Shown here one piece after another: positions 42,546 through 59,413 of a stretch of 60,333 nucleotides of DNA. The stretch is taken from assembly GCA_053919585.1 (NCBI GenBank), contig JBSSHM010000300.1; one strand, given 5' to 3'. Origin of the DNA: Euprymna scolopes. Lineage: Eukaryota. Numbering within the stretch: position 1 is the stretch's first letter; each line of letters opens with the position of its first letter. The position numbers and the translations under genes were made by a program. Below the pieces are notes generated by a model that was not told the origin of the DNA, did not search any database, and worked only from the letters and a program-made list of their open reading frames with translations.

Positions 42546-42574
42546 TTGCATAAGTTACTGAAAATAGTGATAAT
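42546..42574 (+). promoter_or_regulatory. Putative sigma70 promoter of the Cys-rich mini-gene
   Basis: TTGCAT-N17-GATAAT; RBS GAGGAG at about 42613-42618. Confidence 0.55.
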
Positions 42575-42625
42575 CAATACTATAAGGTTTTTTTAATTTA
42601 ACAACTTATTTTGAGGAGAAATATT

Positions 42626-42850
42626 ATGGAAAACTATTCATGCAACTCTTGTGATAGAGTATTAGAAATTGCTAGCAGTGCAGCCTGTGGAACATGTGGT
42701 ACCGACTACAATGTTGTGAAATGTACAACTTGCGATCAAGAATTTAAAGTCATGTCAAATTCTTGTGATAAATGCGGTGACTACGTTCAATCAGTTAGCT
42801 GTTCTGAGTGTAAAGATAAGGTATCTAGTTCAGCGTGTAGCTACTGCTAA
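42626..42850 (+). CDS. 74-aa Cys-rich protein with six CxxC motifs (zinc-ribbon/metallothionein-like)
   Basis: CNSC, CGTC, CTTC, CDKC, CSEC, CSYC; strong RBS, promoter and terminator. Confidence 0.85.
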   Translation: MENYSCNSCDRVLEIASSAACGTCGTDYNVVKCTTCDQEFKVMSNSCDKCGDYVQSVSCSECKDKVSSSACSYC

Positions 42851-42865
42851 TCTAAAGATACAAAT

Positions 42866-42920
42866 AAGTCCCAACACATAAAACAGCTTCAACTGGTTTG
42901 TGTGTTGGGACTTCATTTTC
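42866..42920 (+). terminator. Terminator of the Cys-rich mini-gene (possibly bidirectional)
   Basis: AAGTCCCAACACATAAA...TTTGTGTGTTGGGACTT followed by CATTTTCTTT. Confidence 0.8.
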
Positions 42921-53873: not shown

Positions 53874-54974
53874 TTAATGCCAAAATACTCCAATACCTGC
53901 CACCCCATGAGCCCCACACTGCTGGCTAAGTTGCAAATGTTGTTCATGTAAACCACCCAAATAATACACAGGCACACTCGCTAACTGCGTAAGTCCCTCC
54001 GCTCGCCTAAAGCCAATTGCCTGCTTAGTAGCATCAGATTGAGTCGGTAACACTGGTGAGATGCAAATAAAATTCACCTCAATTTTATCACTGTACAACA
54101 ACTCCTGTTCATTATGCACCGAAGCTGCCCAGCAATAATGCGGATAACTTTTTCTTATCTTATGCATTCCCTCCTTGGCTAAATGCACTAAATCTGATGA
54201 ACGCAAATGCCACCCCACAATTACTCCAGTAAACTCATCAGGCAATCGCCAACGTGCCACCTCATCATCCCCTGTCTCAACATTCATACTTGCACACTGA
54301 GAATTTAGCAAAAACTGACACGCATACTGCTTAGCTAAGCCTCGCAATTGCTTGGCAAATTCCCCATCTGCCAGGCATGTATTCCACTGTGCAAAAGGCA
54401 TACGCAATTGCAATAACCTTGCCCCCCTTTCACATGTCAAGCGTAATTTCTCTATCAACTCTACACCATCAGTAAATTCTCCACTAATGGCATAATAATT
54501 AGGCAAACAAATGGCATCTACTAAACCACGATTTGCCGCTGGCAACATGGATGCACGGATGCACTCACCCTCCCACCACTGAAGCACTTGCCCCTCAGCT
54601 GCATACGGTGTTAATGTGTAATGATGAATCTTATACACAAATAAATTCACCTGCAAATCATCATATCGCCACGGGATAGTCATCAAAGGCTGGCAACTCT
54701 GCCTATCGATATTAATCCCCAACTCTTCCATTAACTCCCGTTGCAGTGCCGCAAGTTGCGATTCCTGCGGCTCAATTTTTCCTCCCGGGAACTCCCAAAG
54801 TCCAGCAAAGGATTGCGTGGGGCGTCGCTGTGCTAATAAATACTCAGTGCGTGTATTCAATCCACCACCCGCTCCGCTATTCGCTCCACCATTCGCTCCG
54901 TCATTCTCTCCATTATCCGCTGATGGCACCTGCCGAGCAATCACCCCCACCACTACATTCATCATCTCTGCCAT
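53874..54974 (-). CDS. mutT: Nudix hydrolase MutT fused to a thiamine-phosphate-synthase-like domain
   Basis: WEFPGGKIE..ALQRELMEELG Nudix box; LQLR, ASVHN, SPVLPT, YLGG; follows argJ. Confidence 0.88.
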   Translation of the reverse strand: MAEMMNVVVGVIARQVPSADNGENDGANGGANSGAGGGLNTRTEYLLAQRRPTQSFAGLWEFPGGKIEPQESQLAALQRELMEELGINIDRQSCQPLMTIPWRYDDLQVNLFVYKIHHYTLTPYAAEGQVLQWWEGECIRASMLPAANRGLVDAICLPNYYAISGEFTDGVELIEKLRLTCERGARLLQLRMPFAQWNTCLADGEFAKQLRGLAKQYACQFLLNSQCASMNVETGDDEVARWRLPDEFTGVIVGWHLRSSDLVHLAKEGMHKIRKSYPHYCWAASVHNEQELLYSDKIEVNFICISPVLPTQSDATKQAIGFRRAEGLTQLASVPVYYLGGLHEQHLQLSQQCGAHGVAGIGVFWH

Positions 54975-55004: not shown

Positions 55005-56273
55005 TTAACTGCGATAATCGGCATTAATACTCACATACTGATGGCTCAAATCCGTCGTCCATACCCGATGGTTTGCCTCACCCATACCCAAATCCACCAC
55101 AATACTAAACTCAGGCTTTTGCATAATTTTCTCTGCCACTGGCTCGCTATAATCTCGGCTAAGCTCAGCATTCTCCATCACCACATAGTCATCCAAATAA
55201 ATTTTTACTCGTGCAAAATCCATTGCCACACCCGAGCGCCCCACGGCGGCAGCAATTCTGCCTAAATTCGGATCTTCGGCATAAATGGCCGTTTTCACCA
55301 AAGGGGAATGCGCAATGCTCCATGCCACTTGCTTACAATCACTCAAGCATGCCCCACCTCTCACCTCAATGGTGACAAACTTTGTTGCTCCCTCACCATC
55401 ACGCACAATCGCCTGTGCCAACTCCAGCAACACCGCATTTAATGCCTCTTGCCACGCCCCCCAATGCTGTGCATCAGGATTCATACGCACCCCGCTGGTT
55501 GCCGTGGCAGTGAGCGTGCAAGCATCATTGGTGGAGGTATCCCCATCCACACTGATGCAATTAAATGAATTCTCTACCCCCTGCACCAATGCCTGCTGCA
55601 CATCCGCCTGTGCCATCTCCACATTGCTCCACGCAAAGGCTAGCATCGTTGCCATATTCGGATGAATCATGCCCGAACCCTTCGCTATACCACACACCTC
55701 AATCTGCTTCACCTCCCCTGCCACGCTAAGGCTAAATACTCGTTTTGCTAATTTTGGCTTAGTATCGGTGGTCATGATTGCCTGTGCCACTTGCAACAAT
55801 GCCTCATCTTGCACTGCTTCTTCCTGTGCCGTTTGCCCCCGATTGGCTGCCTCTGTTTGCATAGGGCAAAAATCTGTGATACCCTGCACAAATGGAGCAA
55901 GTGGCATAGCCTGATTAATCACCCCCGTTGAAAAGGGCAAAATCTGCTCCACTGCACAGCCTAGCTTATCCGCTAACAGCTCACAGCTCTGCTCACACAC
56001 CTGCACCCCCGCTAAACCATTGCCACAATTAGCATTACCACTATTAATTAATAAAGCACGTGTTTGGCTTGTGTGTTGCACATGCCGTTTTGCCACCTGC
56101 ACCGGTGCTGCCACAAAGCAATTTTGCGTGAACACACTGGCAGTGATAGCCTGCTCAGGGAAAGTGATCACCGCTAAATCTTTCCCCTGCTTTTTAAAAC
56201 CGGTACGCATTGCATAACACCCCACTTGGCTATCATCACTTATGTTCACTATTTTCTCTGCTTTCTCTGTCAC
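55005..56273 (-). CDS. argJ: Bifunctional ornithine acetyltransferase
   Basis: NSGNAN, STGVI, KGSGMIHPNMATML, RDGEGATK, NADYRS. Confidence 0.97.
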   Translation of the reverse strand: MTEKAEKIVNISDDSQVGCYAMRTGFKKQGKDLAVITFPEQAITASVFTQNCFVAAPVQVAKRHVQHTSQTRALLINSGNANCGNGLAGVQVCEQSCELLADKLGCAVEQILPFSTGVINQAMPLAPFVQGITDFCPMQTEAANRGQTAQEEAVQDEALLQVAQAIMTTDTKPKLAKRVFSLSVAGEVKQIEVCGIAKGSGMIHPNMATMLAFAWSNVEMAQADVQQALVQGVENSFNCISVDGDTSTNDACTLTATATSGVRMNPDAQHWGAWQEALNAVLLELAQAIVRDGEGATKFVTIEVRGGACLSDCKQVAWSIAHSPLVKTAIYAEDPNLGRIAAAVGRSGVAMDFARVKIYLDDYVVMENAELSRDYSEPVAEKIMQKPEFSIVVDLGMGEANHRVWTTDLSHQYVSINADYRS

Positions 56274-56298
56274 GCTTGCTTTCTCCTTAATAACTTAT

Positions 56299-58338
56299 TT
56301 ATGACTTATTCATTGCTTTTTCATACGCTTCAATCATCTTATCTAACTCTTGCTGTGAATAGCTACCTAAATTATTCAACTCCTCATCGCTTAGCTCAAC
56401 GTAGCGAGTGGCTTGCTGAATACGCTTGATGGCATGAGTGATATAGTCTGTGTCTGCCCATGAACGATTTTTTTTCTCATCCACTAACCTTTGTAATGCC
56501 TGCACGAATGCTGCTTTCTCTTCATCACTAGGCACGGCTTTTTTGATATCCTTAAGTTCTCCATTTTTACCCACTTGCTGTGTCATCTGCTCAACAAAAT
56601 TGCTGTTACCCCAATGATCTGTATATACTCCAGATAAGTTCGCCATAACGAGGTACGCTCCGCATAAGTTCGCAAAATTGAGGGTCGCTCCAGATAAGTT
56701 CGCAAAATTGAGGGTCGCTCCAGATAAGTTCGCCTCCCTGAGGTCCGCTCCGCATAAGTTCGCCCCATAGAGGCCCGCTCCGCATAAGTTCGCCCCATAG
56801 AGCCACGCTCCGCATAAGTTCGCCTTACGGAGGGCCGCTCCGCATAAGTTCGCCCCATAGAGGTCCGCTCCGCATAAGTTCGCCTTACGGAGGGCCGCTC
56901 CGCATAAGTTCGCCCCATAGAGGTCCGCTCCAGATAAGTTCGCATTACGGAGGACCGCTCCAGATAAATTCGCCCCATAGAGGCCCGCTCCGCATAAGTT
57001 CGCCTCACGGAGGTGCGCTCCGCATAAGTTCGCCTCACGGAGGTTCGCTCCGCATAAGTTCGCCTCATGGAGGTTCGCTCCAGATAAGTTCGCCTCAACG
57101 AGGTACGCTCCTGATAAGTTCGCCTTACGGAGGTCCGCTCCAGATAAATTCGCCTGCAAGAGCCACGCTCCGCATAAGTTCGCCTCAACGAGGTACGCTC
57201 CAGATAAGTTCGCCTCCCTGAGGTTCGCTCCGCATAAGTTTGCCTTATAGAGGTACGCTCCTTGCAAGTTAGCTTGCCCTAAGTTTATCCTAGCTAAGTA
57301 ACCCTCTGATGGAAACTGCACGCCAACCAAACTGATGGTTGCCAAAGGAAAATCATGATTCACCAAGAGATGAAACCAATCTTCAGCCGCAATGCGATTC
57401 ACTTGTTGCAATAGCGGATCGCTGGCAATCAATACCTGCAACCTATTCCAATAATCAATAAAAAAAATCCCAATATCTTTTTCTGATACTTTACCAAGCA
57501 ATGAGGTTAACTCTGCATCATCCAGTATTTTTTGATGTTGTTGCCGCAATACCGAAACAAAAATCTCAAAGGCAGGGCGGCGAAAGCTCTCGCCAAAATC
57601 CCCCTTTAAATAGCTTCGTAGCTGATGCAGAGCAGAAATTTGCAGGCTAATGACTGGTGATAAATTGCTATTATCCTCCTTAGCGTACGGAAGTAACGGT
57701 TGGGTAAGCGTGCTATCGGTTGAAATTTGTTTGCTTAGGGTAGTGAGGGGGGGAGCTAATGATGGATTATCAATCACGCCCGTTGCCCATTGTTGCAATT
57801 GTTGAAATTCTTTGAGATTGGTATCTTTACGGGCAGTGCTAAGTTCTTGTGATTTATTAATATCCCGATAAAACCAGATAATAAATAATACCGGTGCAGC
57901 AATCACCATATGTGCCACACTAAATAAACTCCACACACTCCCTTTATCACGACCTATCTCTAATAACTGACTCAGTGAACTCCATGGATCACTGAGCGAG
58001 TGAATAAATGATTTCACTTCACAGTCTGTTTTTACTTTCCCCACACAGGATAGACCGATTAAGAAATCATATAACACCACACCGAGATACGCCAATAGCA
58101 ACAAAAAAAACGCCTTGATACAGGCTTGCAAAAAAATAGTAGATTGCCAATCTGGAAATAGTTTTGCACCGTTTTTATACCTGTACCAGCGTATTTTTAC
58201 CCAATGCCCTATCTTGCCAGCTAAAGCGGTGATGGTTGACTTCACCCATGGGATGAGCTTAATGATGGGATTAGTCCACAGAAATTTTTTAGCGTTAATA
58301 AAAAAATTTTTCATCCGCTCTATCCACTCAATCGTCAA
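56299..58338 (-). CDS. Membrane-anchored pentapeptide-repeat protein
   Basis: Two predicted TM segments followed by about 43 A-x-L-x-x pentapeptides. Confidence 0.92.
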   Translation of the reverse strand: MTIEWIERMKNFFINAKKFLWTNPIIKLIPWVKSTITALAGKIGHWVKIRWYRYKNGAKLFPDWQSTIFLQACIKAFFLLLLAYLGVVLYDFLIGLSCVGKVKTDCEVKSFIHSLSDPWSSLSQLLEIGRDKGSVWSLFSVAHMVIAAPVLFIIWFYRDINKSQELSTARKDTNLKEFQQLQQWATGVIDNPSLAPPLTTLSKQISTDSTLTQPLLPYAKEDNSNLSPVISLQISALHQLRSYLKGDFGESFRRPAFEIFVSVLRQQHQKILDDAELTSLLGKVSEKDIGIFFIDYWNRLQVLIASDPLLQQVNRIAAEDWFHLLVNHDFPLATISLVGVQFPSEGYLARINLGQANLQGAYLYKANLCGANLREANLSGAYLVEANLCGAWLLQANLSGADLRKANLSGAYLVEANLSGANLHEANLCGANLREANLCGAHLREANLCGAGLYGANLSGAVLRNANLSGADLYGANLCGAALRKANLCGADLYGANLCGAALRKANLCGAWLYGANLCGAGLYGANLCGADLREANLSGATLNFANLSGATLNFANLCGAYLVMANLSGVYTDHWGNSNFVEQMTQQVGKNGELKDIKKAVPSDEEKAAFVQALQRLVDEKKNRSWADTDYITHAIKRIQQATRYVELSDEELNNLGSYSQQELDKMIEAYEKAMNKS
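56629..57273 (-). repeat. Coding 30-bp tandem array, 21.5 units: GCGAACTTAT(CT/GC)GGA-GCG-NNN-CTC-NNN-NNN
   Basis: Unit-by-unit reading; 645 bp; visibly more GC-rich than its flanks. Confidence 0.95.
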
Positions 58339-58372
58339 CCAATTGCTAGCATCATGTTTAATAATTTAAGGC

Positions 58373-59413
58373 TTAGGCTAGCAAAGGCAGTTGCTTAAGT
58401 CCTATGCATTCATCTATGCCAAGTATCAGGTTCATATTTTGTACTGCCTGCCCGCTTGCCCCTTTCATGAGGTTATCAATCACGGAGGAAATCACTAGTG
58501 TGTTCCGCCCTTGCGGCATCACTGCAGCCATGGCACAGCGATTCGTACCACGCACTTGCTTGGTTGTCGGTATGCTTGCTCTAAGCAGGCGAATAAATGG
58601 CTCATCGGCGTAACAATCCTGCCATGCTTGATAAATATCTGCTAGGCTCACCCCTTGTGCTAATTGGCAGTAGATGGTGGATTCAATGCCACGTGTGAGC
58701 GGCAAAAGATGTGGTACAAAGGTTACTTGTATGCTTGCCTTACCTTGGCGAAAACGGCTCAACTCTTGTTCAATTTCTGGCAAATGGCGATGCCCTGATA
58801 CGCCGTATGCCTTAAAATTTTCATCATTTTCTGTGTAAAGATTGCCCAAATTAAGGCTCTTGCCTGCCCCACTGATGCCACTTTTGCTATCAATAACGAT
58901 ACCTTGCTCAGCGATTAGCCCAGCTTGTAATAAGGGAGCTAGAGGAAGCTGAATGGAGGTGGGATAACAGCCGGGATTGGCAATCAGCTGGGCATTGGCT
59001 ATGTTTGCTCGATGCAGTTCAGTTAGCCCGTACACCGCTTGCTCAAGTGCAGTTAAATCGCTATGCTCACAGCCATACCATTTAACAAATTGCTCAGCAT
59101 CTTGCAGGCGAAAATCAGCAGATAAATCAATCACCTTAACCCCTGCTTGCATGAGTTCACCAGCTTGTTGCATAGCAACTTGATGTGGCGTGGCATAAAA
59201 TACCACATCGCAGGCTTTGAGTTTTGCCATGTTGACATCTTCAAAGCATAGTGGTGAATCAAATCCCGGAAATACCTCTGCAATGGATTGCCCAGCTTGT
59301 GAGCGTGAGGCAATGGTGTGAATGCTTATTTGTGGATGTGGAATAAGCAGTCTTAATAGTTCCAATCCTGTGTAGCCGGTGCTACCAACAATACCAATAA
59401 GAAATTTTTTCAT
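58373..59413 (-). CDS. argC: N-acetyl-gamma-glutamyl-phosphate reductase
   Basis: GSTGYTG, DLSADFR, ANPGCYPT, DNLMKGASGQAVQN. Confidence 0.98.
   Translation of the reverse strand: MKKFLIGIVGSTGYTGLELLRLLIPHPQISIHTIASRSQAGQSIAEVFPGFDSPLCFEDVNMAKLKACDVVFYATPHQVAMQQAGELMQAGVKVIDLSADFRLQDAEQFVKWYGCEHSDLTALEQAVYGLTELHRANIANAQLIANPGCYPTSIQLPLAPLLQAGLIAEQGIVIDSKSGISGAGKSLNLGNLYTENDENFKAYGVSGHRHLPEIEQELSRFRQGKASIQVTFVPHLLPLTRGIESTIYCQLAQGVSLADIYQAWQDCYADEPFIRLLRASIPTTKQVRGTNRCAMAAVMPQGRNTLVISSVIDNLMKGASGQAVQNMNLILGIDECIGLKQLPLLA

What the first reader, a model, noticed from the sequence alone, without database searches (positions are those of the whole stretch)
56629..57273. Pentapeptide array with fixed scaffold and hypervariable outward-facing codons (NNC/NNT/NNG pattern)
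Seen: 21 decamers ANL[S/C]G-AxLxx (the first is ANLQG). In the variable half GCG and CTC are invariant in 21/21 units. The three variable codons change almost only at positions 1-2: NNC 19/21, NNT 18/21, NNG 18/21. Halves recombine (TATGGG with GGC, GAC or TGG; CGTAAG with GAC or GCC; AGGGAG with AAC or GAC). Ser/Cys toggles by a two-base TCT/TGC switch. Established: in the Rfr beta-helix, i-1, i+1 and i+2 face outward, so a 10-aa period gives two constant and two variable faces. Inference: a diversifying binding surface shuffled by unequal crossover or gene conversion under positive selection. The codon pattern also resembles adenine-directed DGR mutagenesis of AAC/AAT/AAG, but the near-invariant adenines of the constant half argue against a classical DGR.
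Basis: partly seen in the sequence, partly recalled or inferred. Interest (0 to 1): 0.75.

Follow-up and report, generated by a model that had tools for sequence, protein, structure and literature searches.

The report
Membrane-anchored pentapeptide-repeat protein, two variable faces
The repeat is real: a bacterium found in a mollusc assembly has a membrane-tethered beta-helix protein whose 21 near-identical 30-base units differ almost only by amino-acid-changing mutations at three outward-facing codons. The codon pattern also occurs in ordinary pentapeptide-repeat genes and is not the work of a diversity-generating retroelement.

Summary
On the minus strand, 56644-57273 holds 21 in-frame 30-nt units (ANL[S/C]G-AxLxx) plus a half unit. 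GCG and CTC are invariant, and the variable codons are NNC 19/21, NNT 18/21 and NNG 18/21.

The array lies in a 679-aa protein (56299-58338): a basic N-terminus, two hydrophobic segments, a conserved helical domain with no library or fold match, about 46 pentads and a helical C-terminal domain. A syntenic relative has argC directly next to argJ, so the gene is a lineage-specific insertion or loss.

Among units, variable codons have pN 0.60 against pS 0.13, and structural codons have pN 0. A conservative count gives at least 25 replacement steps against 6 silent steps (P=5e-4). The fixed third positions are the genome's minor codons, so they reflect recent common descent of the units.

The same pattern occurs in five homologous arrays and two unrelated pentapeptide genes, so it is generic. 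What is particular to this family is the alternation of a constant and a variable pentad (23 of 51 members). In a sister clade, alleles with 94-95% identical N-termini have scrambled variable residues and 10-19 units.

There is no RT, no template copy and no adenine-specific pattern, so a DGR is rejected. Polymorphism in this species could not be tested. Function is unknown.

The parts
56299..58338 (-). Whole gene for the pentapeptide-repeat protein (679 aa from the listed TTG; an in-frame ATG at 58312-58314 is an alternative start)
   Evidence: ORF list, translation, Pfam PF00805 E=5e-59
58039..58146 (-). First hydrophobic segment (residues about 65-100). It follows a basic N-terminus (12 K+R against 3 D+E in residues 1-65).
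   Evidence: Kyte-Doolittle scan and charge counts; AF2 helix 63-100
57865..57942 (-). Second hydrophobic segment (residues about 133-158). It ends in the family-invariant W155, R158 and D159.
57346..57864 (-). Conserved helical domain of unknown function (RKDTNLKEFQ...LQISALH...FRR motifs). This domain defines the family.
   Evidence: Alignment A1 invariant columns. 457 representative clusters match it. No hit in Pfam, NCBIfam, PADLOC, PHROGs or PDB, and no fold match.
57274..57345 (-). Degenerate N-terminal pentads (residues 332-355) that start the beta-helix
   Evidence: AF2 model shows 5-residue beta-bridge periodicity from the first residues of the modelled piece
56644..57273 (-). Array of 21 thirty-nt units. 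Each unit has a constant pentad ANL[S/C]G and a variable pentad A-x-L-x-x.
56764..57003 (-). Units 10-17, which have a 60-nt (one full coil) super-period alternating x-YG and x-R(K/N) pentads. It includes a 66-nt exact duplicate at offset 60.
56629..56643 (-). Terminal half unit ANLSG, leading into the C-cap
56302..56628 (-). Helical C-terminal domain, conserved in the family. In locus L001 it is also joined to a different membrane N-terminus.
   Evidence: Alignment A2, AF2 model; no PDB or Pfam match
58373..59413 (-). argC, upstream neighbour on the same strand, 34 nt from the gene
55005..56273 (-). argJ, downstream neighbour on the same strand, 25 nt from the gene

Best explanation
The stretch encodes the beta-helix of a protein from an undescribed family of membrane-anchored pentapeptide-repeat proteins. 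The helix probably faces the cytoplasm. The gene sits as a lineage-specific insertion between argC and argJ of a poorly sampled proteobacterium that was assembled together with a mollusc genome. The array is young and evolves in concert. Slippage or unequal recombination keeps duplicating and deleting 30-nt units, and often 60-nt units (one full coil), which preserves the face register. This turnover keeps silent sites and even rare codons identical from unit to unit. Every second pentad is held at the consensus ANL[S/C]G. In the other pentad, point mutations at the first and second positions of the three outward-facing codons are retained far faster than silent changes. The result is a square prism with two constant and two variable ladders. 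Shown here: the anatomy, the fold, the replacement excess, the unit duplications, the insertion, and the allele scrambling in a sister clade. Inferred: that the excess reflects positive selection for a changing interaction surface, that the helix is cytoplasmic, and that the constant pentads mainly stabilise the fold. The partner and the cellular role remain unknown.
For: Anatomy. Fold: Pfam, AF2 with pLDDT 80 and a beta-bridge every 5 residues over about 230 residues, Foldseek hits to HetL, Np275/276, Qnr and MfpA at E down to 6e-15. Selection signal: variable codons have pN 0.60 against pS 0.13, constant codons have pN 0, and there are 25 replacement against 6 silent steps, P=5e-4. Fixed third positions come from descent and not from codon bias: GCG, CTC, AAC, TGC, GAC and TAC are minor codons in this genome (7-23% of their families), and the same amino acid uses TAC at codon 7 but TAT at codon 9. 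Duplication: a 66-nt exact repeat at offset 60, identical units 19/20, 13/15 and 10/17. Family behaviour: the same replacement excess in arrays of L001-L005 and L020. Decapeptide alternation is seen in 23 of 51 family members and in none of 7 generic proteins. Window and L003 both encode ANLSGA but with different silent sites, each homogeneous within its own array. Rapid allele turnover in a sister clade: flanks are 97-98% identical while the gene is 59-87% identical. N-termini are 94-95% identical while arrays sit at the roughly 70% floor set by the seven constant positions, with 10-19 units. Mosaic alleles carry 0 silent and 2 replacement differences, both at outward positions, across the shared array stretch. 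Insertion: L018 keeps fldA-argC-argJ-nudix/thiE but has argC and argJ 1 nt apart. Topology: two hydrophobic segments and an N-terminus with net charge +9.
Against: Comparisons between units of one array are not independent, and only about 7 silent sites exist per unit. The conservative test is significant for the window but only P=0.007-0.18 for individual homologous arrays. No second allele of this species was available, so ongoing diversification here is extrapolated from relatives. No partner, phenotype or expression data exist. The constant pentad differs between lineages (ANLSG, AQLQG, ANLTN, AHLEG), so its role is unclear. Array GC3 is 0.64 against 0.40 in the rest of the gene. This shows that some force other than simple drift acts on silent sites, and it could distort the silent-site yardstick. 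The array could contain assembly errors, and that cannot be checked without reads.
Confidence: 0.6

Rival explanations
1. A diversity-generating retroelement (or a close analogue) mutagenises AAC/AAT/AAG-type template codons in the array.
For: The NNC/NNT/NNG pattern resembles DGR variable repeats, and A is the commonest base at the second positions of the variable codons.
Against: The adenines of the constant half (AAC, TTA, GGA) are unchanged in 83 of 84 cases. There is no second copy of the unit in the window. Only two ORFs of 150 aa or more carry a YxDD-like motif, and they are HemA and ArgJ. Neighbours are housekeeping genes. The same pattern occurs in unrelated arrays from many organisms. 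Tandem units as DGR targets are not known (own knowledge).
Confidence: 0.02
2. There is no positive selection. The three outward positions are simply unconstrained, and the apparent excess comes from a biased silent-site yardstick, for example GC-biased conversion or selection holding third positions.
For: Array GC3 is anomalously high in every low-GC lineage. The test within variable codons alone has little power, since only about 1.7 silent sites exist there. The pattern is generic.
Against: Under neutrality, first and second positions of the variable codons should vary no more than silent sites, yet the excess is about 5- to 15-fold. Position 27 lies between two variable positions, so conversion tracts cannot homogenise it separately. 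The outward codons of the constant pentad stay fixed (pN 0.10, almost all from the Ser/Cys toggle).
Confidence: 0.12
3. The unit types are old cassettes kept by balancing selection and merely shuffled by short-patch conversion or unequal crossover. The diversity would then be ancient and not newly generated.
For: A limited set of blocks recurs (TAT GGG x5, CGT AAG x3, and others). In L003 each block carries its own linked synonymous Leu codon, and in L004 whole-unit haplotypes recur.
Against: In the window the linked Leu codon is CTC in 21/21 units. The third positions inside the blocks are uniform, which old cassettes should not show.
Confidence: 0.1
4. Selection acts for folding and not for binding. 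Diversity between neighbouring rungs prevents out-of-register stacking or aggregation of a very regular solenoid.
For: Sequence diversity between adjacent repeats is known to reduce misfolding in repeat proteins (own knowledge). The generic nature of the pattern fits a structural cause.
Against: Half of the pentads remain identical through 21 units without apparent harm. The variable residues are rich in Tyr, Arg, Trp, Gly and Asp/Asn, which is typical of interaction sites. Alleles of close strains are completely scrambled.
Confidence: 0.12
5. The array is an assembly artefact (a collapsed or chimeric repeat).
For: Tandem repeats of 630 nt are error-prone in assemblies, and no reads could be laid.
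Against: The frame is intact through all units. Conserved N- and C-terminal family domains flank it in the right order. Homologues from independent assemblies have the same build.
Confidence: 0.03

Closest known systems
Pentapeptide-repeat proteins (Pfam PF00805; solved examples HetL 3DU1, Np275/276 2J8K, MfpA, Qnr)
   Same: The A(D/N)LXX consensus, a right-handed four-sided beta-helix, and inward-facing i and i-2 residues.
   Different: It is far longer (about 46 pentads) and membrane-anchored, with undescribed N- and C-terminal domains. It has strict alternation of constant and variable pentads. It scores far below the Qnr/MfpA family cut-offs and its array is near neutral in charge (12 K+R against 11 D+E). 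It is therefore not a gyrase-type DNA mimic.
Pfam PF25296 'Decapeptide repeat region'
   Same: A 10-residue super-period within pentapeptide repeats. Several family members match it.
   Different: The window protein itself did not reach E<=0.01 for this model. That entry describes a repeat, not the two-face variability or its evolution.
DotG/IcmE pentapeptide-repeat region of the Legionella type IVB secretion system
   Same: A pentapeptide-repeat block whose length varies between species and even between strains, attributed to intragenic recombination and diversifying selection (PMC6761968). There is a weak NCBIfam hit over the repeat only.
   Different: The protein and its context differ: there is no TrbI/VirB10 domain and no secretion genes nearby.
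TAL-effector repeats with repeat-variable di-residues (an analogy from own knowledge, not a homologue)
   Same: Units are near-identical at the DNA level and variation is confined to a few fixed codons. Arrays are reshuffled by recombination.
   Different: The fold is different, no target code is known, and there are three variable residues on two opposite faces.
DGR variable proteins
   Same: Variation is confined to the first two positions of particular codons.
   Different: There is no RT, no template repeat, no adenine specificity, and the fold is not a C-type-lectin or Ig-like variable region.
Hailong HalA (membrane channel effector; a pentapeptide-repeat plus channel protein is mentioned in PMC13586616, and the mechanism is summarised in PMC13434031)
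   Same: A membrane protein with a large cytoplasmic part. Some relatives of the window gene lie beside restriction-modification and toxin-antitoxin genes.
   Different: No HalB-like nucleotidyltransferase is adjacent. The N-terminal profile has no sequence match to any PDB chain, and there is no fold match. PADLOC gives no hit.

Membership tests
Pentapeptide-repeat protein superfamily | Tandem A(D/N)LXX pentads recognised by PF00805 | tested here: met
   E=5.1e-59, 7 stretches
Pentapeptide-repeat protein superfamily | Right-handed quadrilateral beta-helix fold | tested here: met
   AF2 beta-bridge every 5 residues over about 230 residues. Foldseek hits to HetL, Np275/276, Qnr and MfpA, probability 1.00.
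TM / RKDTNLKEFQ-domain / pentapeptide-repeat family (undescribed; defined here) | N-terminal hydrophobic segments followed by the conserved helical domain with invariant W155, R158, D159, R170, K171, D172, L175, F178, Q182 | tested here: met
   Alignment A1. 84 word-indexed hits. 457 representative clusters at E<=1e-3.
TM / RKDTNLKEFQ-domain / pentapeptide-repeat family (undescribed; defined here) | Conserved helical C-terminal domain after the array | tested here: met
   Alignment A2 consensus and AF2 helices
Diversity-generating retroelement target | Reverse transcriptase nearby | tested here: not met
   No RT-like ORF in the 60-kb window. The rest of the bacterial genome was not searchable.
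Diversity-generating retroelement target | Template repeat homologous to the variable region | tested here: not met
   The unit core occurs only inside the array
Diversity-generating retroelement target | Differences confined to template adenines | tested here: not met
   Constant-half adenines are invariant in 83 of 84 cases
Qnr/MfpA-type topoisomerase-protecting DNA mimics | Match above the curated family cut-off | tested here: not met
   82 bits against a cut-off of 240 (Qnr), and 65 against 360 (MfpA)
Qnr/MfpA-type topoisomerase-protecting DNA mimics | Strongly electronegative, DNA-like surface (own knowledge of the family) | tested here: not met
   The array has 12 K+R against 11 D+E. This is a sequence count only, not a surface calculation.
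Hailong HalA effector | Operon partner HalB nucleotidyltransferase | tested here: not met
   The neighbours are argC and argJ
Hailong HalA effector | Sequence or fold similarity to solved HalA | tested here: inconclusive
   No PDB hit by profile, Foldseek or VIA-align. However, the membrane part of the model is loosely packed and only a monomer was modelled.
Known anti-phage defence proteins (PADLOC) | Match to a PADLOC model | tested here: not met
   No family matched the whole protein or either terminal domain

The most novel reading that the evidence does not exclude
This family may be a natural 'programmable' solenoid. Each rung would carry a repeat-variable tri-residue on two opposite faces, and strains would rapidly re-write these to recognise a changing cytoplasmic ligand, such as a phage or host-derived protein or a polymer with a 4.8-angstrom repeat. 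The membrane N-terminal module would act as the output, making it an undescribed single-gene sensor. A weaker variant of this reading is that an unknown mechanism targets mutation to these codons.
Probability: 0.08. Interest if true: 0.85.

Novelty: new variant of a known kind. Interest (0 to 1): 0.42.

Why it matters
Pentapeptide-repeat proteins are very common, yet few have a known partner. This study shows three things. DNA-homogeneous arrays accumulate replacement changes almost only at the three outward residues. One membrane-anchored family confines this to every second pentad, which gives two constant and two variable faces. Alleles of near-identical strains are fully scrambled. Together these mark the family as a candidate fast-evolving recognition scaffold in host-associated and marine bacteria. 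They also give a concrete and cheap test: sequence the locus across host individuals and pull down partners. In addition, the result warns against reading NNC/NNT/NNG-like patterns in such arrays as evidence of a retroelement.

Tried and rejected
No public run was listed for 56000-58400, so no reads were laid and polymorphism in this species stays untested. A protein-pattern scan of genome contigs found no relative. Exact scans for the 18-nt constant core in genome contigs and metagenome contigs gave only single chance matches, so no close allele exists in these collections. The N- and C-terminal domains have no hit in Pfam, NCBIfam, PADLOC or PHROGs. They also have no sequence hit to PDB and no convincing fold match (Foldseek best E=0.3; VIA-align Z<8 on helical hairpins only). 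A viral-contig scan with the family profile found 1 relative among 2.9 million contigs, so the family is not typically phage-borne. Literature searches for pentapeptide repeats combined with symbiont, Bathymodiolus, SUP05, diversifying selection or hypervariable found nothing on this family. Only the DotG precedent and the Hailong mention were useful. DGR, Qnr/MfpA and HalA membership were considered and rejected or left inconclusive, as listed in the membership test. The promoter and terminator scan around the gene was at chance level.
Full report
Observation. The stretch was read on both strands, and the coding frame is on the minus strand. Translating 56299-58338 gives a 679-aa protein. Residues 356-565 form 21 exact decamers, ANLQG/ANL[S/C]G followed by A-x-L-x-x, and a 22nd ANLSG follows. 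GCG at codon 6 and CTC at codon 8 occur in 21/21 units. Codon 7 is NNC in 19/21, codon 9 is NNT in 18/21 and codon 10 is NNG in 18/21. Codon 4 is TGC x12, TCT x7, TCA x1 and CAA x1. The 18-nt constant core occurs 21 times against 0 expected and nowhere else in the window. Tandem Repeats Finder reports periods of 30, 60 and 90.

What the gene is. Pfam recognises only pentapeptide repeats (E=5e-59). The first 355 residues and the last 110 or so match nothing in Pfam, NCBIfam, PADLOC or PHROGs. The N-terminus is basic (12 K+R against 3 D+E in residues 1-65). Two hydrophobic segments follow at about 65-100 and 133-158. By the positive-inside rule this puts the rest of the protein in the cytoplasm, which is an inference. 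After the second segment comes a helical domain with invariant residues (W155, R158, D159, R170-D172, L175, F178, Q182 and others; alignment A1). A region-restricted search found 84 proteins sharing this domain, the best at 43-46% identity. A profile search of 1.84 billion representatives found 457 clusters. AF2 models this part as all-helical (pLDDT 78). It has no significant match by Foldseek, VIA-align or PDB sequence profile. The array plus C-terminus models at pLDDT 80, with a beta-bridge every five residues over about 230 residues followed by five helices. Foldseek returns HetL, synthetic pentapeptide solenoids, Np275/276, Qnr and MfpA. With four pentads per coil (established for this fold) and no interruption of the 30-nt period, constant pentads occupy two opposite faces and variable pentads occupy the other two.

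Context. The neighbours are housekeeping genes on both sides: hemA, an aspartokinase, gmk, a LysR regulator, dnaG, an SDR, nudix/thiE, argJ, then the gene, then argC and flavodoxin. The best argC relatives are only 73% identical, so the organism is poorly sampled. Earlier notes of this scan describe the assembly as a mollusc (cephalopod) genome with bacterial pieces. A metagenomic contig carrying the 73% argC (L018) keeps flavodoxin-argC-argJ-nudix/thiE, but its argC and argJ are 1 nt apart. The 2.07-kb gene is therefore a lineage-specific insertion, or a loss in the relative. It lies 34 and 25 nt from its neighbours on the same strand, with no promoter or terminator signal above chance. Family members elsewhere sit in unrelated contexts. 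Some lie next to restriction-modification and toxin-antitoxin genes. Only one relative was found among 2.9 million viral contigs.

How the array evolves. Among the 21 units, the three variable codons have pN 0.60 against pS 0.13. The six structural or constant codons have pN 0 and pS 0.04-0.09. Pairwise comparisons are not independent, so I also counted the minimum steps needed to connect the distinct codons in each column. This gives 25 replacement steps on 7.3 sites in the variable codons, 6 silent steps on 7.25 silent sites in the whole unit, and 0 replacement steps on 13 sites of the structural codons (binomial P=5e-4).

The fixed third positions are not codon preference. GCG, CTC, AAC, TGC, GAC and TAC are minor codons here, at 7-23% of their families. 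Tyr is TAC at codon 7 but TAT at codon 9. They are therefore inherited from a recent common unit. Recent duplication is directly visible as a 66-nt exact repeat at offset 60 and as identical units 19/20, 13/15 and 10/17. Units 10-17 alternate x-YG and x-R(K/N), which is a 60-nt period equal to one coil. The simplest reading is concerted evolution by unit gain and loss, together with selective retention of replacement mutations at outward residues.

Is it special? Partly. The same behaviour is seen in homologous arrays from five other lineages. It is also seen in two unrelated generic pentapeptide genes: P0038, a protein with a C-terminal DUF5758 domain, and P0077, a protein with a long non-repeat N-terminal region. 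In those two genes the units read GCG/NAC/CTG or CTC/NNC/NNG. What characterises this family is the alternation itself. Identity at lag 10 exceeds identity at lag 5 by at least 0.15 in 23 of 51 members and in none of 7 generic proteins. The constant pentad differs by lineage: ANLSG, AQLQG, ANLTN or AHLEG. Window and L003 share the peptide ANLSGA but encode it with different silent sites, each uniform within its own array. This shows DNA-level homogenisation within lineages and protein-level conservation between these two.

Allele turnover. No allele of this species could be obtained. In a SUP05-like sister clade, two genomes with 97-98% identical flanks have genes that are only 59-87% identical. 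Alleles with 94-95% identical N-termini have arrays at about 70% identity, which is the floor set by the seven constant positions, and they carry 10-19 units. Two mosaic alleles share a stretch that is nearly identical in DNA, and within its array part they differ by 0 silent and 2 replacement changes, both at outward positions. One genome carries a second tandem gene with a different membrane N-terminus but a homologous array and C-terminal domain.

DGR and other memberships. The constant-half adenines are unchanged in 83 of 84 cases. No template copy exists in the window. The only two ORFs with a YxDD-like motif are HemA and ArgJ. Scores against Qnr and MfpA models are far below their cut-offs, and the array is near neutral in charge, so a gyrase-type DNA mimic is not supported. 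A Hailong-like role was considered, because a pentapeptide-repeat plus channel protein is mentioned for that system. However, there is no nucleotidyltransferase partner, no PADLOC hit and no similarity to solved chains. The closest documented precedent for length-variable, recombining pentapeptide blocks is DotG/IcmE (PMC6761968).

Verdict. The pattern is largely generic. The protein belongs to an undescribed, fairly small family whose function is unknown. I commit to concerted evolution plus positive selection on two faces of a cytoplasmic, membrane-tethered solenoid (confidence 0.6).

Noticed in passing
window 56644-57273 against 56302-56628 and 57274-58338; also L001-L004 arrays: Third-position GC of the array is 0.64 against 0.40 in the rest of the same gene. 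The same excess appears in arrays of four other low-GC lineages. This may reflect GC-biased conversion in recombining repeats or an imported array.
   Followed up: partly
L001:7731-9443 against L002:7657-8565: Two genomes have 98% identical flanks. One has a second tandem gene with a different multi-pass membrane N-terminus fused to a homologous array and C-terminal domain. The other has an unrelated 302-aa gene at that position. Restriction-modification and BrnA-antitoxin genes lie next to it.
   Followed up: partly
L020 against L021 (P0036 and P0007): These are mosaic alleles. The central domain and most of the array are almost identical in DNA, while the membrane N-terminus and the array end plus C-terminus are strongly diverged. 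This points to modular recombination within the gene.
   Followed up: partly
L018:8792-8794 against window 56273-58373: The nearest available relative has argC and argJ abutting. The pentapeptide gene therefore splits an otherwise conserved argC-argJ pair in the window.
   Followed up: yes
window 57273-56629, codon 4 of each unit: Twelve surface cysteines (ANLCG) lie at the corners after the constant faces. The Ser/Cys states differ by two adjacent bases, no intermediate is present, and there is no clear link to the neighbouring variable pentads.
   Followed up: partly
window 27477-28448 and 42546-42920: Earlier first-reader notes on this window flag an ADP-ribosyltransferase-like ORF and a small CxxC-rich protein. 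I did not examine either.
   Followed up: no
window 54854-54921: A 12/24-nt tandem repeat lies near the 5' end of the nudix/thiE gene (an Asn/Gly/Ala-rich stretch in the protein).
   Followed up: no
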